64,000 nucleotides of DNA, from NCBI RefSeq assembly GCF_006345805.1, contig NC_043000.1, positions 108,872,001-108,936,000 of the forward strand, in the 5' to 3' direction. This DNA comes from Octopus sinensis. Taxonomy: Eukaryota. Every line of letters starts with the position of its first letter. The first letter of the stretch is position 1. Shown piece by piece: positions 3,342 to 64,000 of the stretch. The position numbers were made by a program, and so were the translations under genes. Under the pieces are notes generated by a model, which saw only the letters and a program-made list of their open reading frames with translations, did no database searches and had not been told where the DNA came from.

Positions 3342-3385
3342 GCATATATATACGTGTATATATACATATATATATATATATTATA

Positions 3386-3430
<45 letters not shown>
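3000..3430. repeat. Compound (TA)n/(TATACATA)n microsatellite
   Basis: Direct reading; it explains the YIYI pseudo-ORFs. Confidence 0.95.
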
Positions 3431-3434
<4 letters not shown>

Positions 3435-3840
3435 TTTCGTCGTTTTTTCCCTTTTGCCTGCGTGGTTTGTTTTCAAGTGCTTTGGTTTTTCTGGGAACCC
3501 CCTTTAAAGTAGAAGGAATAGCTAAGATTTTTTGACTACTATTTCTAAACTTCGGTATGTGGTGAAGCAAAGGGTTGCTAAACCCTATTTATAAAGTATA
3601 TATATATATATATACATACATATACATACGTATATATACATACATATACATACATAAATGCACACACACACATACATATATATATATACACACATTCATA
3701 ATATGTACATGCGTGCTCATTTACACTTACATAGGCATTTATATATTTACGTTTTTATACGCATGTGCATAAATGCATTTATATTTATATGGAATATAAA
3801 AGATATTGAAGTAAAAAAAACAAAAAAAATAATGTAAGAT

Positions 3841-6552: not shown

Positions 6553-8040
6553 TAGTTTCAGCTCAGAGCTGTGGCCATGCTACACTGTTATTGAGAGCCT
6601 CCTCCAATATGTGGCATTTGGTGAATAAGGGAGTTTGATATCGTTACCCTCATTTGCACCTCTTTGCCGCGAGGTAGGTTCATCTGAGACTCTCGGCAGG
6701 AAGAGGTCCAGTTTTCATTTAAAAACATCTACATCCACTTTGTGTAGGTCCCCCAGGTTCTTAAGGAGAATATTAAAAAAACTGTGGGTTCCTAAAACCC
6801 AGGCTGTTGTAGTAACTGGTCCTGAAGCGCGAGTGCATTGTTGAGATCTTTGGCACTGTGCAGTGTTGACCCATTCTGGCATTTGTGTAACTTTCAATGC
6901 CAAAATTTGGCAGAATTCCTTCCAAGATCTTCCAGATATATATTACTGTATACCTATCCCGCTTTCGCTCCAGGGTGTAGAGTCACAGCCGTTTCAGTTT
7001 TTCCCAGTAGCTGCGCTGTTGCAATGAGACGATCTTTGTGAATCTTCGCTGGATTGCTTCAAGGTCGGCTGTTAATTTTATACTCCCATAGCTGGGAGCA
7101 GTAATCCAGGCGGCTGAGGGCCATCATAGTTTCCTTCTCATTGGTTCTGAACGTTCTTAGGATCCATCCAGCCAGTCGTCTGCACTTTGCCACCATCCTG
7201 GTAATGTGCACTTGGAAAGAGGTATCATCACTCATGCCGATACCCAGGTCCCTCACTGATTTAAGCTCTGGGATTGTAATCCGCTGTGGATCAGTGAACC
7301 CTGTAAGTTTTATATTCAGTTTTGAATGCTCGTAGCGCAGGGCTTGGAATTTTTCAGCATTAAACTGCATATCATTGTCCTCAGCCCATCTGAAAATTAA
7401 GTCCAGCTCTTGCTGCAGATGCGCAACATCGTTGAGGTCTCTGTATTTTTTGCGTGACTTTCGTATCGTCTGTGCAACTAGCTAGGGTGGGTGTCCGGGC
7501 AGCTGAGGGCATATCTGAGAGGGCCATTTTGAAAAGCAGTGATCCCAGGACGGTAGCCTGTGGAACACCGCTCACTATTTGTGTTTACATATAGATGGCT
7601 CCATTGGCCACTACTGCCTGACTTCTATCTTTCAGAAAGTCATGTAACCATTCTCCAAGTTTTCCAGCTATACCGAGATCACGCAGTTTGTGGCATATCA
7701 TACCATGATACACCTTGATTTGTTGAGTAACTGCGTCAACACCCAGTCATAATGTTGTAAGAGCTGGGCCAGGCAGCTCTTACCTGGTGGAAATCCAACA
7801 ACACGAAACGTTCTAGATTCATGCCAATGTCAGGTGTGGAGAGACATTTCGGTCAGTCCTCTTTTTGGATCATTTTCCAGTCTGCTTCGTGGAAGTTCAG
7901 ATTGGAGAGATTTTGGGTGCTGCCTTTAGGCTGTATGTCTCTGGCTACTTTCAGCCCAAACATAGACAGCTCTATTATGTTGTGGTCCGAAACTAATGTC
8001 GGCGTCACTTTCACATCATGAACGATGTCCGTATTTGAAA
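6551..8040 (-). mobile_element. CR1-group LINE, internally deleted copy (APE C-terminus + RT + 3' tail), subfamily beta
   Basis: SGVPQATVLGSLLF, DDTKV, QFNAEKFQAL, WILRTFRT, SRLDYCSQLW; tail AGCATGGCCACAGCTCTGAGCTGAAACTAG at 6551; DNA matches the 42283-43900 copy. Confidence 0.85.
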
Positions 8041-12616: not shown

Positions 12617-12648
<32 letters not shown>

Positions 12649-12655
<7 letters not shown>

Positions 12656-12683
12656 ATTTGTACTTTGGTACTTTGGTTCCAAC

Positions 12684-12725
<42 letters not shown>

Positions 12726-12760
12726 GTTGGAACCAAAGTACCAAAGTACAAATACACACA
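12649..12760. repeat. Perfect 112-bp palindrome centred on (AT)18
   Basis: TGTGTGTATTTGTACTTTGGTACTTTGGTTCCAACCCA-(AT)18-TGGGTTGGAACCAAAGTACCAAAGTACAAATACACACA. Confidence 0.95.
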
Positions 12761-12770
12761 TATATATATA

Positions 12771-13490
12771 TAGGTGGGAACCAAAGTACATAATACGGTT
12801 TTTTTTTACGTAAATGTCAAAAACAATATTTAGATGTTTGTACTTACCTATATTCAACCGCATGTATCAATTTCTGCTGGGTCTGTAAAGAAACATGAAA
12901 TCGAGAATTATCCTGAAGGAAAATGACACCCTTGTGATGGACAAATTCTGGACATTATTCATTGATTGCTTCCTTTAATCGTTCTAAGTACAACGTTTGT
13001 TTTGCAGAACAATCCCGTAATACACAACGCCTTTCCAATCCCACCAAATACATAGATTCACCTTCTTTGGTTACTGACCGGTTTTTGGAGGGATTAAAGG
13101 TCGTTCATTTTGTTTTCCCCTGAGTCTTTTTCGCTCTACATTGTTGTAAAGAATCCAGTTTCCGTCACCTGTCGCCGTTCTTTTAAAAATGGGTCGCTTT
13201 TGTTGAGTTTGTGTAGAGAATCGCAGATGGAAATGCTGCCCATAATGTTTTTTTTCCTTTAAAATTCGAAACATGCTAAAAATATGGCTGTTCGTGTATC
13301 TCGCTGCTTTTAAATGCCTTAAAACTGTCATGAGACAAGCGGAGGATCTCTTGTGATATCTCGTGTTGTGTGGGCTCGATTACTTTTGATTGACGTTTCG
13401 ATTCGGTCATCGTCAACGATTCTAGGGCTCCTGCAACTTTCACGGTCTTCCAAATCAAAATTTCTATCTACAAACAGTCCTTTCAGCTAT
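12771..13490 (-). mobile_element. Mariner (Mos1-like) transposase relic with one TIR
   Basis: TIR-like TAGGTGGGAACCAAAGT at 12771. Minus-strand pieces PIFKRTATGDGNWILYNNVERKR and KGVIFLQDNSRFH resemble mariner TGDE/HHDNARPH motifs. Confidence 0.75.
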
Positions 13491-13630: not shown

Positions 13631-13856
13631 GAAGGTGCGTGACTTAGTGGTGAGGGTGATGAATTCATGAGCGTAAGATTGTGGCTTCGCTTCTTGGAGT
13701 AGGCGGTGCGTTCTTGAGTAGAACATTTCATTCCACGTTGCTCCGTTCCACCCAGCAGGAAAAAATGAGTAATCCTGCGACGGACCGGCGTCCCCTCCGG
13801 TTGGGAATATATGCACCGGAGAAACCGGCCCTTATGAGTCTATAGGACTCGGGAAG
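13631..13856 (+). mobile_element. tRNA-derived SINE with a V-domain-like core
   Basis: Head GGTGCGTGACTTAGTGGTGAGGG; central CCTGCGACGGACCGGCGTCCCCTCCGG resembles the V-SINE motif CTGCGATGGACTGGCGTCCCGTCCAGG (recalled, not aligned). Confidence 0.55.
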
Positions 13857-17083: not shown

Positions 17084-17129
17084 GCATACGTATACACTTA
17101 CATATTTATATATACATCCACACATACAT

Positions 17130-17356
17130 GTGCCTGTTTTTGTGTTTGTACCCCAACCCACTATTCGATAACCAGTGTTGGTTTGTTTATGTTCCCGTAA
17201 TTAAACGGTTCGGTAAAAGTGACCAGTAAAATAAGTACCACACTTAAAAAAAATGTAAGCCCTGGAGTCAATTTGTTCGGCTCAACCATCCAAGGTGGTG
17301 CTCCAGCATGGCCACAATCCACTGACTGTAACAAGTAAAAGATAAAAGATAAAAAG
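17130..17356 (+). mobile_element. SINE family A, diverged 3' half
   Basis: GGTGCTCCAGCATGGCCACAATCCACTGACTGTAACAAGTAAAAGATAAAAG tail. Confidence 0.75.
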
Positions 17357-27364: not shown

Positions 27365-29525
27365 TATAAATTATTAATCTAACTCACAAGGAACTAACAG
27401 CAAACCAAATAAACATACTTTCCAAAGGACTCAAGTTTACACCCACCCCACAACACCCCAACTACAATGAAATGAAAGAAGACATCGCAGAATTCTGCAG
27501 AAAATTAAGACTTACTGAGGAGCTATACGATAAATACAACGAGGACGAATCGTTAGCCAGAAATAGGAGTAACTACACCCCCTCGAAAGGTAAGAATAAA
27601 ACACTTGATGATTTCTGTGACCACATATCAAATTACCCATATCAACATATGCACAAAAAAAAAACACAAACCAAACTTCAGCAAAAAAGAATGGGCTGAG
27701 TTGAACAAATTAAAACTAGATAAAACAATAACAATCAAAGAGGCCGATAAAGGGAGTGCTGTTGTCTTAATGGATACGACATTTTACATAACTTTGGTAC
27801 TTTCTATGCTGGAAGACACAACATACTATGAAAAGGCACAAAACTACAGTCAACAAAAAATAATGAGGGAACTAAAATCCATATTAAACCCATACAAAGC
27901 AGGGCTCACCGACAAAGAATATGATTATATGACCAATTTCACAAGTAAAACCAGCCAATTCTACGGTATACCTAAGATACACAAAAGTGAGAAAATAAGC
28001 AACGCATGCAAGATAGCTACAGACAAAATAATTAAAGTCCCTAATCCTAATGACCTCAAATTGAGACCCATAATAGCAGGTCCCGCATGCGAAACCCACC
28101 GCCTCAGTAACTTTTTAGACACCCTGTTAAAACCACTCCTCAAACATGTCAAAAGCTATATAAGGGACGACTTAGATATGCTCAATCACCTACCGAATAC
28201 TATAAAAAAAACACCATACTGGTATCCTTCGATGTAGTCAACCTCTACTCCAATATCCCCCACAACCTAGGACTAGAGGCAATCCAATTCTGGCTAGAGA
28301 ATCACGCCAACGAACTACCACACCGCATCAAAAAAGAATTTGTGATAGAAGGGGTTAAATTCATCCTGGAAAATAACTTCTTCGCCTTCAATGACAACTT
28401 CTACCGACAAAAATCGGGGACTGCGATGGGTACACGAATGGCCCCCTCCTTTGCCAACCTAGTCATAGGATACCTAGAGATCAGTCTGTATCGTAAGGTT
28501 CTAGAAAGATATGGCAGCCCTTTCTCCATCTACATAGAAAACAACTGGAAGAGATATCTAGATGACTGTTTCATCCTTTGGCATAAAAATATAGAAAAAC
28601 TCATAGAATTCCAGAAAATTTTAAACGGACTGGACGTAAACATCCAATTCACGATGGAATATAGCCAACAACAACTCCCCTTCCTCGATATCCTCATTAA
28701 GAAAGCTAATAATATAATAGAAACAGACATATACTATAAGCCTACAGACTCTAAGCAATATCTTCCATTCAATTCATGCCACCCCAGACACACCAGGATG
28801 AATATCCCCTTCAATCTAGCAAAAAGGATATGCACTATAGTCTCTAACGCAAACACCAGAGACACACGACTACAAGAACTAAAAGATACCCTAATCACCA
28901 GGAACTATCCACCTTCACTTATTGACAAGTGCATTCAACGTGCCCTTCAACTTAACATCAAGGAACTGAGACATCCCAAATCAAAGAAAAACTTACAACC
29001 AAAAGCCTTACCATACATCTCCACACACAACCCTCTCAATAACGAAGCCTTCGACACCATCCTCCACAACATACCCCTCCTAAAAAAGACCACAGAATGA
29101 ACACAATCCTCCAAACACACACGATCATAAAAAGCAAAAGACAGCCTAGATCCATGAAAAGTCTCCTTACACAAACCCGAATTCACTCTTCAACACAGAA
29201 GCCGACAGTAAAAAAATGTGGAAGACCCAATTGCGGGATATGCGACTATCTAATCGAGGGTTCTGAGTTCTCCTTCAAACAGGGACAACGGTTTACAGTT
29301 AAAAGCAACTTCACATGTGCTTCGGAGAACCTAATATACTCACTAACCTGCTCCGGGTGCCAAGAGCAGTACATAGGCCAAACAAAAAATGGTTTGCGTA
29401 AACGAATGGCCCTGCACAGATCCCAGATAAAAATTCCCCAAAACAGAAAAATAGCTTTTAGCCAACACATAGATACTTGCGCCAACAAAAAAACACCAAA
29501 CTTCAGAATTTTCCCCCTCTACTAA
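27365..29525 (+). pseudogene. PLE reverse transcriptase + GIY-YIG endonuclease ORF, broken into at least 4 pieces
   Basis: LRPIIAGP, LVSFDVVNLYSNIP, GTAMGTRMAPSFANL, WKRYLDDCF, LPFLDI, YYKPTDSKQYL, NLIYSLTCSGCQEQYIGQT..RMALHR. Confidence 0.9.
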
Positions 29526-34710: not shown

Positions 34711-36010
34711 ACACACATGCTCACATCTATCTATCGATCGCTCTATCGATCTATCTATGCACACATGCATACACACACGTGTATTTGTGTCTGTGCCCTT
34801 TAACTTGGAGAACAGTGATATTTCATTATAAGAGACAGGTTAAAAAGCAATATACTTTACATATATGGCAAGGAATGTAGGGAAGGACGAATGCATTTGG
34901 CTGAAATGTTTTTCGTTTGACGGTGGAATTGTGGGTCATAAAATGGTGTGTTACTTTCTTTATTGTGAAATGTATGCACGCGCGCGTGTGTGTAAGGGAA
35001 ATGAGGAAGAAAGAGAGAGGAGAAATGGAGAGAAAGAGAATAAAGAGGGAGAGAAAAGGGGAAACGAGAGGAGGTGAAGTTTAGATGCTCGAAACAATAT
35101 TTTGTGCTTGTGGAGGAAGATAAAAATACACAATCGCAAAAACTACGAAAATGTGCCTCCCCTCATGTTCACATTATTTGGTAGCATAAATATATAAAAA
35201 AAGTTTTTACAGCTAGTCGGATTAGGAACAGATAATTATAATTACAGTAGTTATAATTATAGACGTATGGATAAATAATTATAACTATAAACGCATAGAT
35301 AAACGGATAAAGAAATTGAGAATTCTATATAAGTAAATGCGAAGGCAGTGAAAACGAGATGAATGCTCTTACATTTGATTCCGGTTTGTCTCTCCTTGGA
35401 GGTTCAAATGTCATAGATGTGGAAAACAAACTGGTCTTGATGTGTATTTGTAGAATCTAGACCAGCTTCAGCTTGACATTGAAATTATTCCACAAAGACA
35501 TTGCTTACTTCACTTGAATTACTGTCACCTCTAAGCTATTTAAAATACATCTTATCCAACACCTACACACGTTCAGAAATCCTACTAAAATCAGACTCGA
35601 CATTACATACAAATATAACAAACACATAGATGCATGCATACACATACATACATACATACATACATACATACATACATACATACATACATACATACATACA
35701 TACATGCATGCATGCATGCATACATACATACATACATGCATGCATGCATACATACATACATACATACATACAACTGCAATCTGTGAGAGAAACACTAAAA
35801 ATATGCAAGACTATTCTCAAGTTCCAAATGTGAATTTGTCTATGTTAACTACATCCCAGAGATGGAGTCGTCTCTCTTTATTGGAAACCGGGTCCCACCT
35901 CAGTGGAAGATTTATAATAATTAAAAAAATAGAAGAGACCTACATACATGCACACAATCAGACAGCTAGCTAGTTACACAAATAGATAGCTAGATATGTG
36001 CACCTGTATA

Positions 36011-36569: not shown

Positions 36570-36624
36570 TGTGTGTGTGTGTATATATATCTATATATAC
36601 ATATATATGCCTATATATCTATGT

Positions 36625-36688
<64 letters not shown>

Positions 36689-36920
36689 TATGTCTATATA
36701 TCTATGTATATATATATATATATACATATATATGCCTATATATATATATACATATATATGTCTATATCTATGTATATATATATATATACATATATATGCC
36801 TATATATATATACATATATATGTCTATATATCTATGTATATATATATATGTCCATATATCTATGTATATATATATATATATGTCTATATATCTATGTATA
36901 TATATACGTCTATATATCTA

Positions 36921-36970
<50 letters not shown>

Positions 36971-37095
36971 GTCTATATATCTATGTATATGTATATATAT
37001 ACATATATATGACAATATATCTATGTATATATATATATATACATATATGTCTATATATCTATGTATATATATATACATATATATGCCTATATATC

Positions 37096-37135
<40 letters not shown>

Positions 37136-37184
37136 TATGTCTATATATCTATGTATATATATACATATATATATGTCTATATAT
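36570..37184. repeat. Composite TA minisatellite (TGTCTATATATCTATG motif), left flank of the 5S-LINE unit
   Basis: The same motif recurs at 41171-41590 and 41830-42280. Confidence 0.9.
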
Positions 37185-37272
37185 GATTGATTGATTGATT
37201 GATTCTAGTTTCAGCTCACGAGCTGTGGCCATGCTGGGGCACCGCCATTTGGTGTTGCTACATGGTTTTACT

Positions 37273-40200
37273 TCACGAATGCTTTTTAGCAACTGCCATT
37301 TGGTGCATGAGAGAGTTCGATGCAGCTGCCCTCATCTGCACCTCCTGCCGTGAAGTTGGTTCATCAGGGATACCTGACAAGAAGAGATCCAGTTTCATTT
37401 TAAATACATCTGCATCCACCCCATGCAGGTCTCTTAGGTTCTTCGGGAGGATATTGAAGAGCTGTGGGCCTCGGAAGCCCAGGCTATCACAGTATCTTGT
37501 CCTACATCTTGATGGCAAATTTGGAGTCCTAGGCACCACGCAGTGGCGCCCAGTTCTGGCTTTTGTGTAACTCTCGATGCCAAAGTTTGGGACAAGTCCC
37601 TCCAGGATCTTCCAGATGTATATTATGGCATATCTTTCTCGCCTACGCTCCAAGGAATAGAGTTTTAATCTCTTGAGTCTTTCCCAGTAGCTTATATTCT
37701 TCACAGAGGCTATCTTCTTCGTGTAGCTACGTTGGATCGCCTCAAGTTCTGTGATCAACTTGACACTGGATGATGACCATAGCTGAGAGCAATAGTCAAA
37801 GTGGCTTAGGACAAGGTCCTCCAGAGGACCATCATGGTTTCTTGTTCTCTTGTTCTAAAGGTTCTGAGAATCCATCCGGCCAGTCGTCTACATTTCATTG
37901 CCAATTTAGCAACATGTACACGAAAGGTTGCGTCATCACTCATGTAAATACCCAGGTCACGCACTGATTGTGCCTCTGGGATTGCAATTCCTTCGGGTCC
38001 AGTGTATTCATTGGGTATTGCATTTAGTTTTGCATGCTGATAGTATAAAGCTTGAAACTTTTCAGCATTGAACTGCATGCTATTCTTTTCAGCCCACTTG
38101 TATATTTTGTCCAGCTCACATTGCAGGCGTTTAGTGTCCTCAGGGTTCTGTATTGCCTGTGCAACTTTTGTATCATCTGCATAACTTGTGATCGTGGCTC
38201 TCTGCGTGGCTGAGGGCATGTCTGAGAGGGCCATTATGAACAGTAGTGGTCCCAAAACAGTGCCCTGCGGAACACCGCTCACTATTTGCGTGTTAATGGA
38301 AGTGTTAATTGGCTACTACCACCTGACTTCTATCTTTCAGAAAGTCATGAAGCCATTCTCCCAGTTTTCCAACTATGCTAAGATCACGCAGTTTGTGACA
38401 TATCATTCCATGATCGACTTTATCAAAGGCCTTTGCAAAGTCGAGATATATCACTTCCACATTTGAGTGGTTGAGCAGTCGTTTCAGCACCCAGTCATAG
38501 TGTTGTAGGAGCTGAGTTAAGCAGCTTCTTCCTGGTCGGAAACCATGTTGGGTGTCAGGCAGCAAGTCATTTTCTTCAAGGAAGGTGATCAGTTTCCTTC
38601 TGACTATTCATTCCATGACCTTGCTGATGTGTGAGGTCAGAGAGATAGGTCTGTAGTTCTTGGCCTCCGCTCTGCTACCTCCTTTATGAATAGGGCATAT
38701 TTTACCTTCCTTCAGTTTTCTTGGAAGTTTGCCAGCTGCAAGGAAGCTCTGAAAGAGGAACTGCAGTGGTCTTGCTAGGACTCTCTTACATACTTTTAGG
38801 AGGATTGCCAGGTATCCATCGGGGCCAGTAGCTGAGTCTGTTTTCATTTCATCTATACCCTTTATTACATCGTCTTCCTTTATATCGATGTAATCTGTCG
38901 TCGCCGCCTCTGATTTTATATCTGCAGTGGTAAAGAAGTCAGTTGGATTGGTAATTTGGAAATGCCCAAGGGGTGGAGTGAAAACACTCTTGAATTGCTC
39001 ATTCAGTATTTCACTTACCCTCATTGGTTTTCCTGTGAGTGTGCCATCCTTTTCAAGGAGTGGCCCTATCCTACAGTGCACCGTAGCTGTTTCTTTGGCA
39101 TACCTGTAGAAAGTTCTGGGGTTAGATTTTATGTTGTCTATAGCCCAGGCTTCTTTGCCTGCTCTTTCCTTTTCATGGGAGAGTTGCAGACATTTTTCAA
39201 TTTCCAACAGTTTTATTTTCAGGCGGGACTTTTCACTGCTTTCAATTTGTTTGTTTAGGCGATTTGAAATTTTTGTACGCCGTCTCATTAAAATTTTCCT
39301 CTCTCTGGGGATTTTGTTCTTGTGTACTGTGGCCTTTCTCTCTGGGACACATTTGTAGCATATGGCTTGCATTACAGACATGAATTGTTGAAGTTCCACG
39401 TCGATGTCTGGCGAGGAGAGACATTCAGGCCAGTTTTGTTTGAGGATCTCTTTCTCAATTTGTTTCCAGTTTGCCTTATGGAAGTTCAAGCTGGAAAGAT
39501 TCTGAGGGTTTCTTGTAGGCTGCATGTCCATGCTTTCCTTTGGCCCGTACATGGTCAGCTCTACCATGTTGTGATCCGAGAGTAGTGTCGGTGTCACTTT
39601 CACATTATGGATGAGATCCATATTATTTGTGGAGCAGAGATCCAGTGTGTTACCTGCCCTGCTTGGTTGGAGTATTACTTGCTCCATGTACAGGGTGTTG
39701 ATGAGGTTCAGGAGGGACCTCGCCTGTCCTCGTTCACATCTTGTCATTCCTGGGAGAGAAAGGCCCTCGGGCCATCTGACATTGGGTAGATTGAAGTCTC
39801 CCATAAGAAGTACACTTATGTGTTGTTCTAATGTGATTAGAACTTCTTCTATTTTTATAAGGCAGTCTTCAAACTTGCCTACATGGCTTGGGGCATCTGG
39901 AGGGCGATATGTAGCACACACAACTACATCAAGTTGCCTTATATGTACAATTAGTGTGTCACACACCGAGTTTGATTATGACAAAAGGACCTGGGGTGTG
40001 AGGTCCTCACGGATGTACATAACAACTCCTCCATGACTCCTTTCTTTTCTGTCGGTCCGGAGTACAACATACTGTAGTATGTGTAATTCCGCATCTGCTA
40101 TGTCCGGTTTCAGGTGCGTTTCCGTAAGTGCTATGCATAAGGCTTAATTGCATGCAACAAAGTCTCTCAAGAACGGGATTTTTGTCCTGTTACTGAGTGT

Positions 40201-40374
40201 TTGCAGTCCTCTGATGTTCAGTAGGAGGATCGAGGTGAGGTGTATGCTGTTGCCGGCGGTGTCCACCTTGGGTCTATTTGCTGTAGTGGTCTTGTATATT
40301 GTGGGTAGTCCCATCTGCGAGCTTGGGTTTGATGAAGCCAGGTTAGCTGCTGTACAATCTTTTGTGCCATGCAC
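37273..40374 (-). pseudogene. LINE ORF2 (APE endonuclease + reverse transcriptase), with stop and frameshifts
   Basis: LLNIRGL, TETHL, SHGGV, YRPPD, MGDFNLP, SDHNMV; NYRPISLTS, QHGFRPGRSCLTQL, YLDFAKAFDKV, GVPQGTVLGPLLF, YADDTK. TAA at 40144-40146 and at least three frame changes. Confidence 0.9.
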
Positions 40375-40988
40375 AAAAAAGATTCTTGTTCAGCAGCTGC
40401 CCTTTCAACATCATGTTGGCGGTTTGTGGCACGCACCACATCTGCGTACCTCCGTTTTGGGGCAGATGGTGCGTGGTCCATCCCTTTTCCTTTTGTTAGT
40501 TTGTTTCTGATCTGTTTCGTGTCTCTGCGGCAGGGTCCCCGATGTGCAAAACGGCAGCCTGCACCTTCCTCTCCATGCCAGCAGGTACCTCTCAGGTAGA
40601 ACCTACACACCCGTGTGCGCTGTTTGTTTCCATCCTTTTTGGTATATGGATAGTCAGTTTTATTTCTATTCTTGGCTGTTTCATTTTTTGGTTTTGTTTG
40701 AGTTTTTCTTTTAGTTTTTCCTCCTTTTATTTCTTCTTTGGGTTCTTCATCTCCATGGCTTTTGGTGCTGGTAGGAGCACTTGCACTTGGGTTTACTTCC
40801 CGGGCAGGTTTCTCACTTGAAACCTCTTCCCGGGTGTCTACTAGGTGGGGGTGACTTCTTTCATCAGCACCCGTGTCTCCATCCTTGCCATCTTTACTTT
40901 GTTCATTCTCAAAGATTGCATCAAGCGTGCCAATGTGAGATCGTATAAGTGCATAGGAGCGTACAAACTCCTGCTTCTTCCGCTCCAT
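40218..40988 (-). CDS. LINE ORF1, 256 aa, basic low-complexity region plus CCCH zinc finger
   Basis: Open ORF upstream of and overlapping ORF2; CRFYLRGTCWHGEEGAGCRFAH (C-x7-C-x8-C-x3-H) at 40542-40607. Confidence 0.75.
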   Translation of the reverse strand: MERKKQEFVRSYALIRSHIGTLDAIFENEQSKDGKDGDTGADERSHPHLVDTREEVSSEKPAREVNPSASAPTSTKSHGDEEPKEEIKGGKTKRKTQTKPKNETAKNRNKTDYPYTKKDGNKQRTRVCRFYLRGTCWHGEEGAGCRFAHRGPCRRDTKQIRNKLTKGKGMDHAPSAPKRRYADVVRATNRQHDVERAAAEQESFLCMAQKIVQQLTWLHQTQARRWDYPQYTRPLQQIDPRWTPPATAYTSPRSSY

Positions 40989-41054
40989 CTGAGCTATTAT
41001 CCTTTTATAACTACCGCTCTTCAGCGCAGCTGTAATTATATTGTTAAAAGGTAA

Positions 41055-41170
41055 TGCTTACAGCACCTAGGTTTCCCAAGCAGTCACCCATCTAAGTACT
41101 AACTAGGCTCGATGTTGCTTAACTTCGGTGATCGGACGAGAACCGGTGCTTTCAACGTGATATGGCCATA
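41055..41170 (-). rRNA. 5S rRNA: 5S rRNA copy (about 116 nt, first few nucleotides missing); probably a retro- or orphan copy
   Basis: GGCCATATCACGTTGAAAGCACCGGTTCTCGTCCGATCACCGAAGTTAAGCAACATCGAGCCTAGTTAGTACTTAGATGGGTGACTGCTTGGGAAACCTAGGTGCTGTAAGCA: classic metazoan 5S with box A, box C and paired CCTAG/CTAGG helix. Confidence 0.95.
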
Positions 41171-41591
<421 letters not shown>

Positions 41592-41840
41592 AACCTCGCT
41601 AAGATAAATATTTCAATTAACCTGAAGATTGACTGTAACCATAACTCGAATTATTACGAATTGTACAGCCATGAAACGATCGTAGTGTTTTACTCTTTAT
41701 CTTTTATTAAACTTTTAATTCTTTTGATATATATTTAAAATAATATTAATTAATTAATTATATGTATTGGCTTATGTTTTACATTGTTTGATTTGCCTAA
41801 TAGTGGTTGTATCTCTAATTTAATATAATATATATATATA

Positions 41841-41904
<64 letters not shown>

Positions 41905-41985
41905 TGTATATCTATGTATATATATATGTCTATATATCTATGTGTATATATATATATGTATATATATATATATTATGTCTATTTA

Positions 41986-42016
<31 letters not shown>

Positions 42017-42129
42017 GTCTATATATATATCTCTCTCTCTATATATATGTCTATATATCTATATCTATCTATATATATATATGTCTATATATCTATATAT
42101 ATCTATCTATATATATGTCTATATATCTA

Positions 42130-42164
<35 letters not shown>

Positions 42165-42282
42165 ATATATATATATATAAATATATATAATATATATATA
42201 TATATTCATATATCTATATATATTTATATCGATATATATATATTCATATATACGTCTATATCTCTCTATATATATATACATA

Positions 42283-44908
42283 TATTCCATTTGGACCAGT
42301 GTACCCTGTAAGTTTTATATTCAGTTTTGAATGCTCGTAGCAAAGGGCGTGGAATTTTTCAGCATTAAACTGAATATTATTATCCTCAGCCCATGTGTAA
42401 ATTGAGTCAAACTCCTGCTGCAGGTTTGCAACATCGCTGGGGTTCTGTATTTTCTGCGAGACGTTCGTATCGTGTGCGTAGCTAGCAAGGGTGGCTATCC
42501 GGGCAGTTGAGGACATATCTGAGAAAGCCACTATGAATAGCAGTGGTCCCAAGACAGTGCCTTGTGGAACACCGCTCACTATTTGTGTTTTCATTAAGGG
42601 GGCTCCATTGGTCCCTACTGCCTGACTTATATCTTTCAGAAAGTCATGTAACCACTCCCCAAGTTTTCCAGCTATGCCAAGATCACGCAGTTTGTGGCAT
42701 ATCATACCATGATCCACTTTGTCAAAAGCTTTTGCAAAATCAAGGTATGTTACGGCCACATTTGAGTTGTTGAATAACTGCTTCAACACCCAGTTATAAT
42801 GTTGTAAGAGCTGAGTCAGGCAGCTTCTACCTATTCGGAAGCCATGCTGAGTATCACTCAGCAAGTTATTTTCTTCAAGGAATGCGATTAGTTTCCCTCT
42901 GACTATCCGTTCCATGACTTTGCTGATGTGGGAAGTGAGGGAGATAGGCCTATAGTTTTTGGCATCTGTTCTCCTTCCTACTTTATGCATTGGGCATATT
43001 ATTCCCTCCTTCAGCTTGCTCGGCTGTCTGCCATTTGCAAGAAAGTTCTGGAAGAGAATCTGGAGGGGTTTGGCCAAGGCACGCTTACTCGATTTGAGGA
43101 GGATTGCTGGGAAACCATCAGGACCAGCAGTTGAGTTTGTGTCCACTTCATCTATGGCTAGTAGTATATCTTCTTCGCTAATGTCGACGTATTCCATTGT
43201 AACTGCCTCGTTGGTTATAGATGAGACGGCAAAGAAGTTCACTGGTTCGTTCACTTGTCTATGTTCCAACGGGGTGGTAAAGACACTTTTGAACTGGTCA
43301 TTCAGTATCTCACTGATCATAGTTGGACTGTCTGTGACGGGGCCATCCTTTTGGAAGAGGGGTCCTATCTTGCAGCGTAGTGAGGCTGTTTCTTTGGCAT
43401 AATGAAAGAAGGCTTTTGGGTTTAACTTAATGTTTTTTATAACCCAGGCTTCTTTGTCTGCTTTCTCCCTCACATAGGATTGTTGCAGCCTTTTTTCGAT
43501 CTATCAGTGTTGTTTTTAGGCGAGACCTTCCGCTACTTTTGGCATGTTGGTTGAGTCGATTATCAGCCTTCGTCCGTCGTCTCATGAGGATCTTCCTCTC
43601 CCTTGGAATCTTGTTCATATTCGTTTTGATCTTGTGCTTTGGGACATAGTTCTGGCATATGGCTTTCATAGAAGACATGAAACATTCTAGTTTCATGTCA
43701 ATGTCTGGTGTGGAGAGACATTTCGACCAGTCCTCTCTGAGGATCTCTTTTTGGATCGATTTCCAGTCTGTTTGTGGAAGTTCAGATTGGAGAGATTTCA
43801 GGTGCTTCCTTTAGGCTGTATGTCTCTGGTTACTTTCGGCCCAAACATAGACAGCTCTATTATGTTGTGATCCAAGACTAATGTCGGTGTCACTTTCACA
43901 TCATGAATGATGTCCATATTGTTCGTGAAGCAGAGATCCAGAATGTTATTCGCCCTAGTCGGTCTGAGTACAGCTTGTGCCATGAATAAGGCACTGGTGA
44001 GGTTGAGCAGGGACTCCACCTGTGCTTGCTTGCAATGAGTCAATCCTGAGAGTATGAGACCTTCGGGCCATTTGACGTTGGGGAAGTTGAAATCACCCAT
44101 AAGAAATATGGTCACGTGGTGTTCCAGATTCATGAGGATTTCTTTAATTCTTGTGAGGCAATCTTCAAACTTGCCTATGTGGTTTGGGGCATCCGGTGGG
44201 CAATATGTATTGCATATGACTATATTATGTTGTCGTATGTATACAATTAGAGTGTCACATACCGAATTTGAGTAGGGCAGTAAGTCCTGGGGTGTGAGGT
44301 CATCACGGATGTATACAGCAACTCCACCATGGCTCCTTTCCCTTCCGTCTGTTCGCAGTATGGCAAATTTTGGTACTCGTACTTTTGCATCCTCTATATC
44401 AGGGCTGAGGTGAGTTTCCACGAGTGCTATGCATAGGGCTTGATTGCATGCAGTAAGATATCTCAAGAAAGACATTTTGTTTTTATTTCGATGCGATAGG
44501 CCCTCAATATTTAGTAAAAATTTTGGCGTGATGACTGTGCAGGCGTTAGGGGAGGCAATCGCATGTCTGTTGATTGTGGTGGTCTTGCGCAGTGGTGGGC
44601 AAAGTTCCTTGTTTGCGCTTGATGTAACTAGGTCAGCTGCTGCAGAATCTTTTGCGCCTTGCACAAAACAAAGACTCTTGCTCAGCTGCTGCTTTGTGCA
44701 TAACCTCTGAAGAGTGCACTGCTTTTGCATATTTTTTCTTTGGAGACGATTGGTGTCTTTCCTCAGGGAAATATTTCTCCTTAAGACCCTTTGTAGTTTT
44801 GGCTGGGTCTCGGGTGAGCAAACCGGCAGTTTTTGCCGTCTTCCCCATGCCAACATTTGCCTTGAAGGTAAAAATAACAGGTCCTTGAGTACCCTCCAAA
44901 TTTCTTCT
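42283..44908 (-). mobile_element. CR1-group LINE subfamily beta, inverted 5' segment (ORF1 end, APE, most of RT)
   Basis: CYFYLQGKCWHGEDGKNCRFAH (44814-44879), LLNIEGL, VETHL, MGDFNFP, QHGFRIGRSC, GVPQGTVLGPLLF; ends at YTGPNGI against (TA)n. Confidence 0.9.
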
Positions 44909-45232
44909 TCAGTCGCTTGGACTGCTGCTCTCAACGATGGTCACCACATAATACAAAATTCACGGCGGAACTCGAAGCAATCCAACGAAGCTACACTAAG
45001 AAAATCGTCTCAATCAAACCTATCAGCTACTGGGGAAGACTGAAAGAATTAAAACCATTCTCCCTAGAACGAAGGCGACAAAGTTATGCAGTAATATACA
45101 TCTGGAAAATCATGGAAGGCCTTGTACCAAATTTTGACATTGAAAGTTACTCAAACTGCAGAACTGGGTGCCACTGCATAGTGTCAAAGATCCCAGCATT
45201 GCCATCGAAATACAGGACCAGATACTGTAACA
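44908..45232 (+). mobile_element. CR1-group LINE, 3' ORF2 segment in opposite orientation
   Basis: SRLDCCSQRWSPH..ELEAIQRSYTKKI..SLERRRQSYAVIYIWKI..RTRYCN. Confidence 0.85.
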
Positions 45233-49163: not shown

Positions 49164-50986
49164 AATTGAACTGGTTTCAGCTCATGAGCTGTGGCCATGC
49201 TGGGGCACCGCCATTCGGTGTTGCGACATAACTTTTACTTCACTAATTCATTTTGGAACTTGAAATTTGGTGTATAAGGGAGTTTGACGTCACTGTCCTC
49301 ATTTGCCCTTCCTACTGTAAAGTTGGTTCACCTGGAACGTTTGACAGTAGGAGAAACTAGTTTCATTTTGAAGACACCTACATCCACCCGTGCAGGTCTC
49401 TCAGGTTCTTCGGGAGGATATTGAAGAGCTGTAGTCTTTTAAAGCCCAGGCTGTTGCAATATCTTGTCCTATATCTTGATGGCAAAGTTGGAGTCTTTGG
49501 CACTATGCAGTGGTGCCATGTTCTAGCCTTAGTGTAACTCTCAATGCCAAAGTTTGGGACAAGTTCCTGTAGGATCTTCCAGATGTTCATTATGGCATAT
49601 ATTTCGCACCTACACTCTAGGGAATAGAATCTCAATCTCTTGAGTCTTTCCCAGTAGCTTATATGCCACATAGTGGCTATCTTCGTGTAGCTTCGTTGTA
49701 TTGCCTCAGGTTATGCAATTAATTTTACACTGGTTGGTGACCATAGCTGGGAGCAATAGTAAAAGCGGCTTAGGAAAAATGTCCTCCAAAGGACCATCAT
49801 GGTTTCCTGATCCCTAGTTCTAAAAGTTCTAAGAATCCATCCGGTCAGCTGCCTGCATTTCCTTGCCAATTTAGCAACGTTCACACGTAAGGATGCATCA
49901 TTACTTATATAAATGCGCAGGGCACGCACTGACTGTATCTCTGGGATTGTAATACCTCCAGATCCAGTGTATTTGGTTTGTATTGCATTTAGTTTTGCAT
50001 GGCGATAGCACCAGGCTTGAAACTTTCCAACATTAAACTGCATGCTATTCTTCTCAGCCCACTTGTATGTTTCATGTAACTTCACGTTTCAGGTGAATAG
50101 CATCTTCAAGTTATGTATCATCTGCATAACCTGTGTTCGTAGCTCTCTGTATGGCTGAGGGCATATCTGAGAGGTCCATTATGAACAGTAGTGGTCCCAA
50201 AACAGTGCCTTGCGAACACCACTATTTGCGTGTCATTGGTGGTGGCCTCATTGGCTACTACTGCTTAATTTCTATCTTTCAGAATGTCATGCAGCCATTC
50301 TCTCAATTTCCCAACTATGCCGAGATCACGCAGTTTGAGACATATTCTATGATCAACTTTGTTAAAAGCCTTTGCGAAGTAGAGATATATCACATCCACA
50401 TTTGAGTCGTTTAGGAGCTGTTTCAACACCCAGTCATAATGTTCTAAGAGCTGAGTTAGGCAGCTTCTTTTTGGGTGTCAGTCAGCAAGTCATTTTCCTC
50501 AAGGAAGGGGATTAGTTTTCTACTGACTATTCGTTCCATGACTTAGCTGATGTGCGAGGTCAGAGAGATAGGTCTGTAGTTTTTAGCCTCTGCTCTGCTA
50601 CCTCCTTAATGAATGGGTCATATTTTGCCTTCCTTCAGCTCTCTCGGTAGTTTGTCAGTTGCAAGGAAACTCTGGAAGAGAGACTGCAGTGGTCTTACTA
50701 GGACTCGCTTACATGATTTGCGGCAAGTCCATCAGGGCCAGTAGCTGAATTCGGGTTCATCTCATCCATAGCCTTCGTTACATCATCTGCTTTTATATTG
50801 ATGTATCAATCATCACTGCTTCTGTTTTTGTATCTGCAGTATCGAAAAAGTCAGCTGGGTTGCTGACGTGCAAGTGTCCTGGGGGTGGAGTGAAAACACT
50901 TTTGAATTGCTCCTTTAGTATTTCACTTATCCTCATTAAGTTTCCTGTGTGAACCATCTTTTCTGAAGAATGGCCCTACACTGCAG
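49161..50986 (-). mobile_element. CR1-group LINE subfamily alpha, 5'-truncated and degraded
   Basis: Colinear with 37185-39080; tail GGCGGTGCCCCAGCATGGCCACAGCTCATGAGCTGAAACCAG(TTCAA)2 abuts (TA)n. Confidence 0.9.
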
Positions 50987-50990
50987 GGTA

Positions 50991-52010
50991 AAGAAGCTTG
51001 ACAGAAAACTAGAAAGTTGTTGACGATGTATGGAGTCCAGCATCCAAAAGCTAATATTAACCGGCTTAACTTGAGGAGAGACCAGGATGGAAAAGGCTTA
51101 ATAGCAGTAGATGTATGTGTATAGATTGAAAGAAAACACCTAGTAGAAAATTTACAGAGCAGCACAGAAAAACTACTAAAGACAGTGTATAAAGAACTGG
51201 TGATGAAGCGCGTAATAAAAGAAAAGGACAAGAACGAAATACAAAGAGAGCGCGTCAGACAGATTGAAGAGAAACTTCTGTATGGTCAATTTTAGAGAGC
51301 CACTGAAGTTGTATGTGGAACAAAATCCTGAGCCTGGTTGAAAAAGGGGCAATAAAAAATAGAAGCAGAGAGCCTATTTGTAGCAGCCCAAGATCAAGCG
51401 ATAAAAACAAACAACTCAAGGAAAATTATATATGGAGAAAATGCCAGAAAAATGTAGAACTTGGAACGAGACAATGAAACCCATTGTGGGAGAATGCCCC
51501 AAGATGGTACAAGAAGACTATAAAAAATGGTGACATAACCAGGTTGTAAAGGCTTTACAATGGAAACTGTGTCTGAAATGGAGACTTGAAGCTGGAAACA
51601 TATGGTGCAATCATCGGGTTGAAAGAGTACTGGAGTCGGAACAATGTAAGATTTTATGGGAATTTCCAATTCAAATGGTCAGGAAGAAAATAATAGACCA
51701 GACATAACAATTATAAAGAAAAGTGAAGTTGGTTACTTACCGACCCATCATGTCCGTTTGATTACAGGATCGAAAAGAAAGAGGATGAAAAACAAAAGAA
51801 TACAATCCCTTAAAATTTGAAATAGGAACAATTTGGAGCAGGAGAGCTGTCAAGGTTGTGCCTGTCAATTGGTGCCTTGGGAACAGTAAACCAATATATA
51901 GACAAATGGCTGAAGGAAATTGAAATAGGATGCCCTGTAAAGCTTCTGCAAAACGTTTGTCTCTTAGTGACCGCAAGAATTATCAACAGGGTTCTAAGCA
52001 CTTGAAAGGA
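50991..52010 (+). mobile_element. R4/Dong-clade LINE fragment (RT thumb to RLE C-terminus), degraded
   Basis: YGVQHPKANINRL..GKGLIAV, ESLFVAAQDQA, KILWEFPIQ, NNRPDITII, EYNPLKFEIG, GALGTV. Confidence 0.8.
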
Positions 52011-52014
52011 AAAA

Positions 52015-53790
52015 GAATATCCACTCAAACAGTTTTGTGTAAATTTGATGATATTCCCTTGTCATTTTATTCATTCCTCCAGGGAGGGATGGTAATAACC
52101 TGCAAACATATTTCTCCTCATGCATTTTGATTATTGAAAAGGAAACAGATTCAGAATATTTTCTGAGAACATGCACTTTTAAGTCTTTTTCAAAATTGCA
52201 GTCGTTTGAAGCAAAATGGTCGACAAGTTCTGTCGAACTACTATTATTGTGCCTGACGTCAAATCTGTGCCCATTAAACCTTTTGTTTAATTGTTCTGTT
52301 GTACAACCAACATAAATCAAGCTGTGTTTCGTGCATTCTGCCGCGTACACCAAATGGGAATCTCGACATGTCCCACCTTCTGTATAAATCATAACATTTC
52401 TGTTATGATTCCTGATGGAATTCACTTGACTCATGTTGTTGTACAATGAACAGGGCTTACCTCCCTTATGTCGGTTTTTCAATGTACAGCGTGCAGAAAC
52501 TCCAATGTTAGTTTTCGTGGAGTCAGAAATAGAGTTCAATATTCTTATTCCGTCTAAAGTCGGCTGAGGAAATATCTGTTTGAAACGAGGATACTTTCCT
52601 GCAACATGCTGGTAACTTTCATGCAACACGTTTGGAATACCAGCGAAATTTCGGTGCCAGTTAATCACTGAAGGAATTCTGTCACATATTGCATTGTGTT
52701 GGCTAAAATCATGCGTGAAGGTTTGACTTACTTTCCTATTTCCTTTAACCGTGATTCACTGTAAGCGCGTTTGACATAATGCTGTACAAAAACATCTGCA
52801 TGTTTCTAGTAATCCCCTATGTCAGTACAAATCCGTTTTATCCAAAAAATATGATGCGAATGATTGGAGCGGCGGTGGAGGTAAATGTGAGATGGCGTGG
52901 GCTTGTAAAATAACTCTGTCACTATTCTGCCTCCAGAAAACTTTTGTGTCCAAAAATTCAACGCTAGTTTTTGAAACACTAGTCGTAAATTTTATGTTGG
53001 ACTTAAAGCCATAGCTTTTAGCATAACAGTCACAGAAATGCAAGAAGTCAATTAAACTATCCCGTGATCCTTCCCAAACAAAAAAGACATCATCAATGAA
53101 CCGCAGAGTATTGGTTCATGACCATGAAGGGATTTGAATGTCTTCAGTAACTGTGTTTCGGATTTCGTCATGAAGACATTAGCGAAATTAACTACCATGG
53201 TTGTACCCATGGCACAACCCTTTGTCTGGTGGTAAAATTTTTGTCCAAATTTCATGGTATTACTTTGTACCACTAACCTCAATAACCTACAGAGAAAATT
53301 TGATGGAATACTTTTGTTTGACCGCTTTTCAAAGACATCCATGCATGCTTCTGCCCCTTCATCGTGGTCAATATTGAGATATAAGGAAGAAACATCCATG
53401 GTTACCAAAAAACAGTTCTTGACAAGGTCTCGGTGCTTAAAAAAGGTGATTCGTTTAGTCATAAAATCAACAACTTTCTCGAATATAGGAACTTAATCTT
53501 TTTCCAACAAGGAGTAGAAAGCCATCCTGCCATTCCGAAATCTTGGCTGTACAACATTCATATCCCCTTTAAATTGGGCGCATTAGAGGAAATCTTACTA
53601 ATTTTTTGTTTATTTTAAGGAGACGGTAAAATATAGGTGTTCTTTCTGACCGTAATATCATGGATTCGGCTTTAATGAAATTGTTTCCCTCCAATTCCAG
53701 AATTATTTTGTCAAGTTCGTCTCCGAAATTGGTTTTTGGATCGACAGGTAATTCTTCATATGAAGTTTTGTCTCTCAAAACTTCTTCACA
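52015..53790 (-). mobile_element. Penelope-like element, second family, frameshifted RT + GIY-YIG
   Basis: PIFYRLLKI..MRPI, LVTMDVSSLYLNI, GCAMGT..NFANVFM, LRFIDDVF, VEFLD, LVYAAECTKHSLIYVGCT..RFNGHR. Confidence 0.85.
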
Positions 53791-63819: not shown

Positions 63820-63900
<81 letters not shown>

Positions 63901-64000
63901 ATGTATGTATATATACATACATATATGTGTATATGTGCATATATATATATATATATATAATATGTGTGTGTGTGTATGTGTATAGAAACATACGTATATA

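What the first reader, a model, noticed from the sequence alone, without database searches (positions are those of the whole stretch)
37185..41170. 5S rRNA fused to the 5' end of a near-full-length LINE; the pair sits together in one minisatellite
Seen in sequence: a 5S of about 116 nt (41170-41055, minus strand) lies in the same orientation as the LINE, only about 66 nt upstream of the ORF1 ATG (40988). There is no rDNA spacer upstream. The same TGTCTATATATCTATG minisatellite flanks both the 5S 5' end and the LINE (AATC)n tail, consistent with one 4-kb insertion. The 5S internal promoter (box A, box C) looks intact, and a TTTT follows 5 nt after the 5S end. Established: snRNA/5S-L1 chimeras form by template switching in mammals, and 5S-derived SINE3 elements exist. 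Inference: either (a) a template-switch chimera made by a non-L1 (CR1-group) RT, or (b) a LINE family that has captured a 5S head (TFIIIA/TFIIIC site) as its 5' UTR or promoter. Option (b) would be unusual; I know of no described case in cephalopods but cannot check. The TTTT argues against a full Pol III transcript.
Basis: partly seen in the sequence, partly recalled or inferred. Interest (0 to 1): 0.78.

Follow-up and report, generated by a model that had tools for sequence, protein, structure and literature searches.

The report
5S rRNA–truncated LINE chimeric retrocopy
A copy of 5S ribosomal RNA is welded to the front of a dead octopus LINE that has lost its own front end, and the pair entered a TA-rich repeat as one piece; this is a one-off by-product of reverse transcription of a kind already known from mammals and fungi, not a LINE family that uses 5S as its promoter.

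Summary
Rfam finds one 5S rRNA (window 41173-41055, minus strand, 100.5 bits). It lies in the same orientation as an endonuclease/reverse-transcriptase LINE, and the same minisatellite flanks both ends.

The LINE part is not full length, and the 66 nt between the 5S and the ATG at 40988 are not a 5'UTR. Seven other copies of this LINE family in Octopus vulgaris and O. sinensis start ORF1 25 codons further upstream (MAPKWEKKELNLLLRAWTIASGDPP|NNIITAAL...). Five loci, including the closest relative (88% identical in DNA), carry the native start. All five have a CT-rich 5'UTR upstream, up to about 0.9 kb long, and none has a 5S.

The window copy begins exactly at NNIITAAL (41047), 7 nt (ACCTTTT) after the 5S. 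Its ATG is an Ile codon (ATA) in all five of those loci.

The non-LINE part runs from about position 4 of 5S to the first Pol III terminator T-run, so it has the ends of an RNA. A 7-bp duplication (ATATATA) brackets 41170-37185. Removing the insert restores the exact minisatellite core.

Best reading: a single insertion event in which the LINE reverse transcriptase passed from a 5'-truncated LINE RNA onto a 5S transcript. Option (b), a captured 5S head, is not supported at family level. Copy number in the source genome could not be checked.

The parts
41171..41177 (-). Upstream copy of the target-site duplication ATATATA, preceded by CATAG of the minisatellite core
   Evidence: Read from the sequence. 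It pairs with 37178-37184. Removing the insert and one copy gives the exact core CATAGATATATAGACATAT.
41055..41170 (-). 5S rRNA copy, about positions 4-120 of the RNA; the first ~3 nt are missing. TAT before GGCC fits TAC with a CpG transition (inference).
   Evidence: Rfam RF00001, 100.5 bits, E 8.8e-21, model positions 1-120 over 41173-41055. Helices III-V are all standard pairs. One non-standard pair in helix II.
41048..41054 (-). Seven unassigned junction bases, ACCTTTT (TT ACC TTTT if the 5S ends at GCA). They end in the first T4 run, a Pol III terminator-like run. Probably the 3' trailer of a primary 5S transcript (inference).
   Evidence: Sequence. Homology to other LINE copies begins immediately after it.
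40989..41047 (-). LINE ORF1 coding sequence (NNIITAALKSGSYKRIIAQ), codons 26-44 of the family's ORF1. It is in frame with the rest of ORF1 and is not a 5'UTR.
   Evidence: It aligns with NNIITAALKNNGFHRTIDQ of P0123-P0127 and P0129, and with L001, L002, L006, L007 and L008.
40218..40988 (-). Rest of ORF1 (256 aa, open) with an invariant C-x7-C-x8-C-x3-H zinc finger. The ATG at 40988 is ATA (Ile) in the five loci with a native ORF1 start.
37273..40232 (-). ORF2 remnant: apurinic-type endonuclease plus reverse transcriptase plus C-terminal region. Stops at 40146, 39978, 38610, 38307, 38295 and 37808, and at least 2 frameshifts.
   Evidence: Pfam PF14529 and PF00078; three-frame translation and stop coordinates.
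37205..37272 (-). 3'UTR with two conserved stem-loops (GGCGGTGCCCCAGCATGGCC and CAGCTCGTGAGCTG) followed by AAACTAG
   Evidence: Conserved in 5 copies in the window, L001 and L005. Both stem-loops fold in the window element, the 49.1-kb copy and L001; only the second folds in the other two.
37185..37204 (-). (AATC)5 microsatellite tail of the LINE
   Evidence: L005 has the same tail; other copies have different short tails.
37178..37184 (-). Downstream copy of the target-site duplication ATATATA, followed by GACATAT of the minisatellite core
36582..37177 (.). TA-rich minisatellite, 3' flank of the insertion
   Evidence: TRF; 6 exact cores.
41178..42285 (.). TA-rich minisatellite / (TA)n array, 5' flank of the insertion
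   Evidence: TRF; 6 exact cores.

Best explanation
This is a one-off chimeric retrocopy. A stem-loop- and microsatellite-tailed, non-L1 LINE began target-primed reverse transcription at a nick in a TA-rich minisatellite. It copied its own RNA from the (AATC)n tail back to codon 26 of ORF1, about 1 kb short of the native 5' end.

The reverse transcriptase then continued on a 5S rRNA transcript, starting at that transcript's 3' end. The transcript probably ended in its terminator U-run (ACCUUUU). Either the enzyme jumped between templates or the two RNAs were joined beforehand; sequence cannot tell these apart. The enzyme copied the 5S back to about position 4, and the cDNA was joined to the other side of the break, leaving a 7-bp duplication.

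The product (41170-37185, 3986 bp) was dead on arrival as a LINE because it had no ORF1 start and no 5'UTR. It has since collected 6 stops and at least 2 frameshifts in ORF2.

Shown: the parts, their boundaries, the truncation, the absence of 5S in relatives, and the duplication. Inferred: the order of events, the template jump itself, and that ACCTTTT is a 5S trailer.
For: (1) 5S identity and strand.

(2) The LINE part begins inside ORF1. Six annotated Octopus proteins and two further loci start MAPKWEKKELNLLLRAWTIASGDPP (or a homologue) before NNIITAAL. L001 and L002 share this upstream coding homology (local score 50, reached by 0 of 20,000 shuffles).

(3) The closest relative is L002, 87.7% identical over 1.5 kb. 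It matches from element position 129, right after the TTTT, and carries ORF1 codons 1-25 where the window has 5S.

(4) Rfam finds no 5S in about 169 kb of related loci, including the five with native 5' ends.

(5) The 5'UTR of full-length copies is CT-rich and conserved to -915. None of it is in the window copy.

(6) The non-LINE segment has RNA ends: it starts at about +4 of 5S and stops at the first T4 run. There is no 5S upstream flank and no spacer.

(7) The ATATATA duplication pairs the 5S 5' end with the LINE 3' end. The empty site equals the minisatellite core. Random joints do so in 0.75% of trials, and in 0.14% with a duplication as well.

(8) There are seven T>=4 runs on the sense strand, the first directly after the 5S, so Pol III could not make a full-length transcript from the 5S promoter.

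(9) Precedent exists: small RNA/L1 chimeras in mammals, MGL LINE chimeras in Magnaporthe, and the template-switch model for adding small-RNA heads.
Against: Only one locus could be examined, because the source genome could not be searched by DNA. Copy number of this junction is therefore unknown.

The duplication is a simple TA heptamer in TA-rich DNA and is weak on its own.

The 7 junction bases are unexplained unless the species' 5S gene really has ATTACCTTTT at its 3' end, which was not checked.

No microhomology is visible at the jump.

In human, most 5S/L1 chimeras are antisense and truncated. This sense, nearly complete 5S looks more like the U6/L1 type.
Confidence: 0.8

Rival explanations
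1. Captured head: a sub-lineage of this LINE in the source species replaced its 5'UTR and first 25 codons with a 5S head. It propagates as a 5S-LINE unit, or is the founder of a 5S-headed SINE, and the window copy is one member.
For: The 5S internal control region is largely preserved: 100.5 bits, helices III-V intact. ORF1 downstream of the junction is still open for 275 codons and has acquired an in-frame ATG. 5S-headed SINEs with LINE-derived bodies exist. The source genome could not be searched.
Against: All 5 relatives with a native 5' end lack 5S, including the 88%-identical one. The fusion removes the native start codon. A T4 run sits directly after the 5S, and six more T>=4 runs follow. 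The three other copies of the family in the window carry no 5S, though none reaches the 5' end. ORF2 is heavily damaged.
Confidence: 0.07
2. Two separate events, or a later rearrangement. Either a 5'-truncated LINE landed by chance right behind an existing 5S retropseudogene (or the reverse), or a deletion fused a 5S to a LINE that lay downstream of it.
For: The family seems to favour TA repeats (4 of 5 3' ends), so repeated hits in one array are plausible. Another copy, at 42259-44934, lies just across the same array.
Against: No duplication, A-tail or minisatellite remnant lies between the 5S and the LINE; only 7 nt do. The sequence after the LINE tail duplicates the bases upstream of the 5S, not those upstream of the LINE. 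The outer flanks restore the core exactly. The 5S segment ends at a terminator run and begins at about +4, so no genomic 5S flank is present.
Confidence: 0.08
3. Assembly artefact: TA arrays caused a false join that brought a 5S and a LINE together.
For: Long, imperfect TA arrays flank the unit on both sides.
Against: The 5S/LINE junction lies in unique sequence, about 120 nt from the nearest TA array, so any read covering it spans both parts. The flanks are in phase.
Confidence: 0.03

Closest known systems
Small RNA/LINE-1 chimeric retrocopies of mammals (U6/L1, U3/L1, 5S/L1; Buzdin and colleagues; catalogue in 10.1101/2025.02.02.635956)
   Same: A Pol III small RNA lies at the 5' side and a 5'-truncated LINE at the 3' side. 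They are fused directly, inserted as one unit with one target-site duplication, and do not propagate further. Sense orientation and a nearly complete small RNA match the U6/L1 type.
   Different: The enzyme here is a non-L1 LINE with a stem-loop and microsatellite tail in an octopus. Human 5S/L1 chimeras are mostly antisense and cut at 5S positions 46 or 90. The LINE part here is unusually long, about 3.9 kb.
MGL LINE chimeras (WEIRD / Mg-SINE / MGL) of Magnaporthe grisea (PMC2104539)
   Same: Chimeric retrocopies made by a non-L1 LINE, flanked by direct repeats and explained by template switching.
   Different: That host is a fungus, the partner RNA is different, and the switch sites are recurrent. 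Here there is one example, so no site preference can be judged.
SINE3 and other 5S-headed SINEs, and Kojima's model in which a template switch adds a small-RNA head to a LINE derivative (PMC5786205)
   Same: A 5S head joined to LINE sequence that keeps the LINE 3' tail. This has the architecture of the proposed first step.
   Different: SINEs are short, high-copy and transcribed by Pol III. This unit is 4 kb, has a terminator run right after the head, and nothing shows it was ever copied again.
5S-gene-targeting LINEs such as Mutsu (PMC5340908, listed; details from my own knowledge)
   Same: A LINE physically adjoining 5S sequence.
   Different: Those insert at a fixed site inside genomic 5S genes within rDNA arrays, so 5S sequence lies on both sides. 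Here a whole 5S RNA copy lies only at the 5' end, inside a TA minisatellite, with no rDNA.

Membership tests
Small-RNA/LINE chimeric retrocopy (template-switch type) | Two unrelated transcripts fused head to tail in the same orientation, with the LINE 3' end at the 3' side | tested here: met
   5S (41170-41055) and LINE (41047-37185) lie on the minus strand with 7 nt between them, and the LINE tail is intact.
Small-RNA/LINE chimeric retrocopy (template-switch type) | The LINE part is 5'-truncated relative to full-length family members | tested here: met
   It starts at ORF1 codon 26. Relatives have 25 more codons and 0.36-0.9 kb of 5'UTR.
Small-RNA/LINE chimeric retrocopy (template-switch type) | The small-RNA part has the ends of the RNA, not of the gene: no upstream flank, and a 3' end at or near the transcript end | tested here: met
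   It begins at about +4 and ends at the first T4 run, and minisatellite lies directly upstream. Whether ACCTTTT matches the native gene's trailer was not tested.
Small-RNA/LINE chimeric retrocopy (template-switch type) | One target-site duplication brackets the whole unit | tested here: met
   ATATATA at 41177-41171 and 37184-37178, and the empty site equals the core. It is low-complexity sequence, so weak taken alone.
Small-RNA/LINE chimeric retrocopy (template-switch type) | Unique event: the junction is not shared by other loci | not testable with these tools
   The source genome cannot be searched by DNA. ORF1 is not on record. The JGI metagenome scan was empty and uninformative.
LINE family with an integral 5S head / SINE3-like retrotransposition unit | 5S head present at the 5' end of other full-length members | tested here: not met
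   No 5S in L001, L002, L006, L007 or L008, all of which carry native 5' ends.
LINE family with an integral 5S head / SINE3-like retrotransposition unit | Transcribable as a unit from the 5S internal promoter (no Pol III terminator inside) | tested here: not met
   T4 at element position 122, directly after the 5S. T6 at 791, and five more T4 runs.
5S-gene-targeting LINE (Mutsu type) | 5S gene sequence on both sides of the LINE, within a 5S rDNA array | tested here: not met
   The 3' flank is TA minisatellite, and this is the only 5S in 64 kb.
   No reference RT set was available. Features that fit: PF14529 endonuclease, a 3' stem-loop plus a microsatellite tail, and no poly(A). The CCCH-finger ORF1 is not the usual CR1 ORF1. 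It is not L1-like, but the clade is left open.

The most novel reading that the evidence does not exclude
The chimera was not a dead end. In the source octopus genome, the 5S-ACCTTTT-LINE junction founded a lineage: either shortened 5S-headed SINE3-like elements whose body derives from ORF1, or 5S-LINE copies mobilised in trans. The window would then hold the long founder-type form, a caught intermediate of SINE birth from a non-L1 LINE in a mollusc.
Probability: 0.06. Interest if true: 0.65.

Novelty: new member of a known kind. Interest (0 to 1): 0.3.

Why it matters
It shows that fusing a Pol III small RNA to a LINE cDNA also happens with a non-L1, stem-loop/microsatellite-tailed LINE in a cephalopod. 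The process is well documented for mammalian L1 and for one fungal LINE.

The product has exactly the architecture proposed as the first step of 5S-headed SINE formation.

In practice, this 5S hit is a retro-chimera, not rDNA. The ATG at 40988 should not be annotated as the ORF1 start.

The work also defines the native ORF1 N-terminus, the CT-rich 5'UTR and the 3' stem-loops of an Octopus LINE family.

Tried and rejected
- ORF1 alone as a protein query gave only 2 hits. A 4-sequence profile was needed to reach the N-terminal models.
- The ORF2-derived loci L003, L004 and L005 turned out to be 5'-truncated or cut by contig ends, so they said nothing about the 5' end.
- An exact look-up of the window's ORF1, meant to locate the source assembly, found nothing.
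- A degenerate junction pattern against JGI metagenomes found nothing, as expected for an animal sequence.
- A permissive Rfam scan gave over 200 sub-threshold miRNA matches that are TA-repeat noise, and no second 5S.
- I considered reading ACC of the junction as the CC of the LINE's GAT CCG CCG. Only 2 of 7 bases agree, so the 7 nt stay unassigned.
- I considered a 5S-derived SINE as the partner instead of 5S rRNA. I rejected it because no SINE body follows the 5S.
- The octopus LINE paper describes RTE and Dong elements, not this family, so it gave no clade assignment.
Full report
**What is there**

Rfam finds a single 5S rRNA in the 64-kb window, at 41173-41055 on the minus strand (100.5 bits against a gathering score of 38, E 8.8e-21). 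A permissive scan at E<=1 adds no other 5S, only TA-repeat noise. The first six aligned bases are minisatellite ATATAT and form non-standard pairs. Recognisable 5S begins at TATGGCC (41170), about position 4 of the RNA. TAT could be TAC after a CpG transition, which is inference. Apart from helix I, only one helix II pair is flagged as non-standard.

Downstream on the same strand lie:
- ORF1 (40988-40218, 256 aa) with a CCCH zinc finger (weak Pfam hits to Torus and zf-CCCH);
- endonuclease pieces (PF14529) and reverse-transcriptase pieces (PF00078);
- a 3'UTR and an (AATC)5 tail ending at 37185.

ORF2 is broken by in-frame stops at 40146, 39978, 38610, 38307, 38295 and 37808, and by at least two frameshifts. 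The minisatellite core CATAGATATATAGACATAT occurs six times on each side.

**The decisive comparison**

The closest relative I could reach is in Octopus sinensis (L002). It is 87.7% identical to the element from position 129 to 1662, so the match starts immediately after the TTTT that follows the 5S. Upstream of that point L002 has no 5S.

L002 and an O. vulgaris copy (L001) share a short coding stretch there: MSRTWKRDELALFLRGWRCADGDIQ against MAPKLEKKELNLLLRAWTIASGDLP. The local alignment score is 50 and was reached by 0 of 20,000 shuffles.

A profile of four ORF1 sequences (A1) then found five O. vulgaris proteins and one O. sinensis protein that start with MAPKWEKKELNLLLRAWTIASGDPPNNIITAALKNNGFHRTIDQIERKK, or a homologue of it.

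The window's LINE begins at NNIITAALKSGSYKRIIAQMERKK (41047), in frame with ORF1. So the 59 nt before the ATG are ORF1 codons 26-44, not a 5'UTR. The ATG at 40988 corresponds to ATA (Ile) in the five loci with a native ORF1 start.

Those five loci (L001, L006, L008, L002, L007) have a CT-rich 5'UTR upstream. It is conserved to -915 between L006 and L008 (93%) and to -362 in L001. Rfam finds no 5S in any of the eight related loci, about 169 kb in all.

The LINE part of the window element is therefore 5'-truncated by about 0.4-1 kb, and the 5S sits at the truncation point.

**One insertion**

The non-LINE segment has the ends of an RNA. It starts at about +4 of 5S, with minisatellite directly upstream, and stops at ACCTTTT, the first T4 run after the 5S.

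ATATATA occurs at 41177-41171 and again at 37184-37178. Removing 41170-37185 and one copy gives CATAG-ATATATA-GACATAT, the exact minisatellite core. Random joints of the two arrays give an exact core in 0.75% of trials, and in 0.14% with a 7-nt duplication as well.

Between the 5S and the LINE there is no duplication, no A-tail and no minisatellite remnant. This pairs the 5S 5' end with the LINE 3' end in one event.

**Mechanism**

The best-supported account is target-primed reverse transcription of LINE RNA from its tail. The enzyme stopped, or the RNA ended, at ORF1 codon 26. Synthesis then continued on a 5S transcript from its 3' end, which probably still carried a terminator U-run. The cDNA was joined at about 5S position 4.

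Template jumping and prior RNA-RNA ligation give the same product and cannot be separated by sequence. The jump itself, the order of steps and the nature of ACCTTTT are inferred.

Pol III could not transcribe the unit from the 5S promoter. A T4 run follows the 5S directly, and six more T>=4 runs lie on the sense strand, including a T6 at element position 791.

**Comparison with known cases**

Small RNA/L1 chimeras, including 5S/L1, are catalogued in mammals. In that catalogue, human 5S segments are mostly antisense and truncated at positions 46 or 90, whereas U6 is sense and full length. The present case resembles the U6 type.

Chimeras made by a non-L1 LINE are described in Magnaporthe.

Kojima's model for SINE origin has a template switch adding a small-RNA head to a LINE derivative, and 5S-headed SINEs with LINE-derived bodies exist. 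The window element has that architecture but shows no sign of having been copied again.

It is not a 5S-targeting LINE of the Mutsu kind: 5S lies on one side only, and there is no rDNA.

The LINE's clade was not determined. It has a PF14529 endonuclease, two conserved 3' stem-loops, AAACTAG and a short microsatellite tail. It is non-L1 and probably of the tail-recognising kind.

**Limits**

The source genome could not be searched by DNA, so I cannot count loci with this junction. The window's ORF1 is not on record and the metagenome scan was empty. A local 5S-headed sub-lineage therefore cannot be excluded. I give it about 6-7%. Misassembly is unlikely because the junction lies in unique sequence.

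**Verdict**

This is a new example of a known kind of event in a new host and with a different LINE type. Interest is modest.

Noticed in passing
window 37185 (flank 37184-36582), 6549, 49160; L005 17085: In four of five copies, the 3' end of this LINE family is followed within 25 nt by (TA)n of at least 5 units. A random position meets that condition 2-4.5% of the time. The family may target TA repeats, or its tails may seed them.
   Followed up: partly
window 37205-37272; also window ~6560-6620, ~49165-49220; L001 ~13758-13800; L005 ~17090-17130: Conserved 3' end: hairpin GGCGGTGCCCCAGCATGGCC, hairpin CAGCTC-NN-GAGCTG, then AAACTAG and a variable short tail ((AATC)n, TTCAA-like, A-rich). This looks like a tail-recognition signal of a 'stringent' LINE.
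   Followed up: partly
window 42259-44934 (minus) and 44916-45228 (plus): A second, roughly 72%-related copy of the LINE family lies just across the TA array. It lacks both its 5' end (it starts at ORF1 residue 117) and its last ~800 nt, which are replaced by the array. An inverted fragment matching element positions 3373-3685 abuts its 5' end.
   Followed up: partly
L002 45720-46605 (O. sinensis VCDQ01000708.1): The O. sinensis gene model named 'phosphatidate phosphatase LPIN3, partial' (P0002) incorporates ORF1 of this LINE as coding sequence. This is a likely annotation artefact.
   Followed up: no
L006 5086-6000; L008 20717-21645; L001 9470-9831: O. vulgaris copies share a CT-rich 5'UTR, 93% identical over about 915 nt between L006 and L008. 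This is an unusual low-complexity LINE 5'UTR.
   Followed up: partly
window 40480-40550 (ORF1 residues 147-168): ORF1 carries an invariant C-x7-C-x8-C-x3-H zinc finger, with C147, C155, C164 and H168 invariant in A1. From my own knowledge, this is not one of the common LINE ORF1 types (RRM/CCHC, L1-type, PHD/esterase).
   Followed up: no
window 51997-52668 (minus); 28342-29097 (plus): An ORF with a GIY-YIG domain (E 7.8e-05), possibly a Penelope-like element, and a weak RT fragment from another retroelement.
   Followed up: no
window-wide, e.g. 12635-12775, 35625-35773, 63869-63983: TA- and ACAT-rich arrays give more than 200 sub-threshold Rfam matches to miRNA families (mir-297, mir-3149, mir-466 and others). 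All are below gathering score and are repeat noise.
   Followed up: yes
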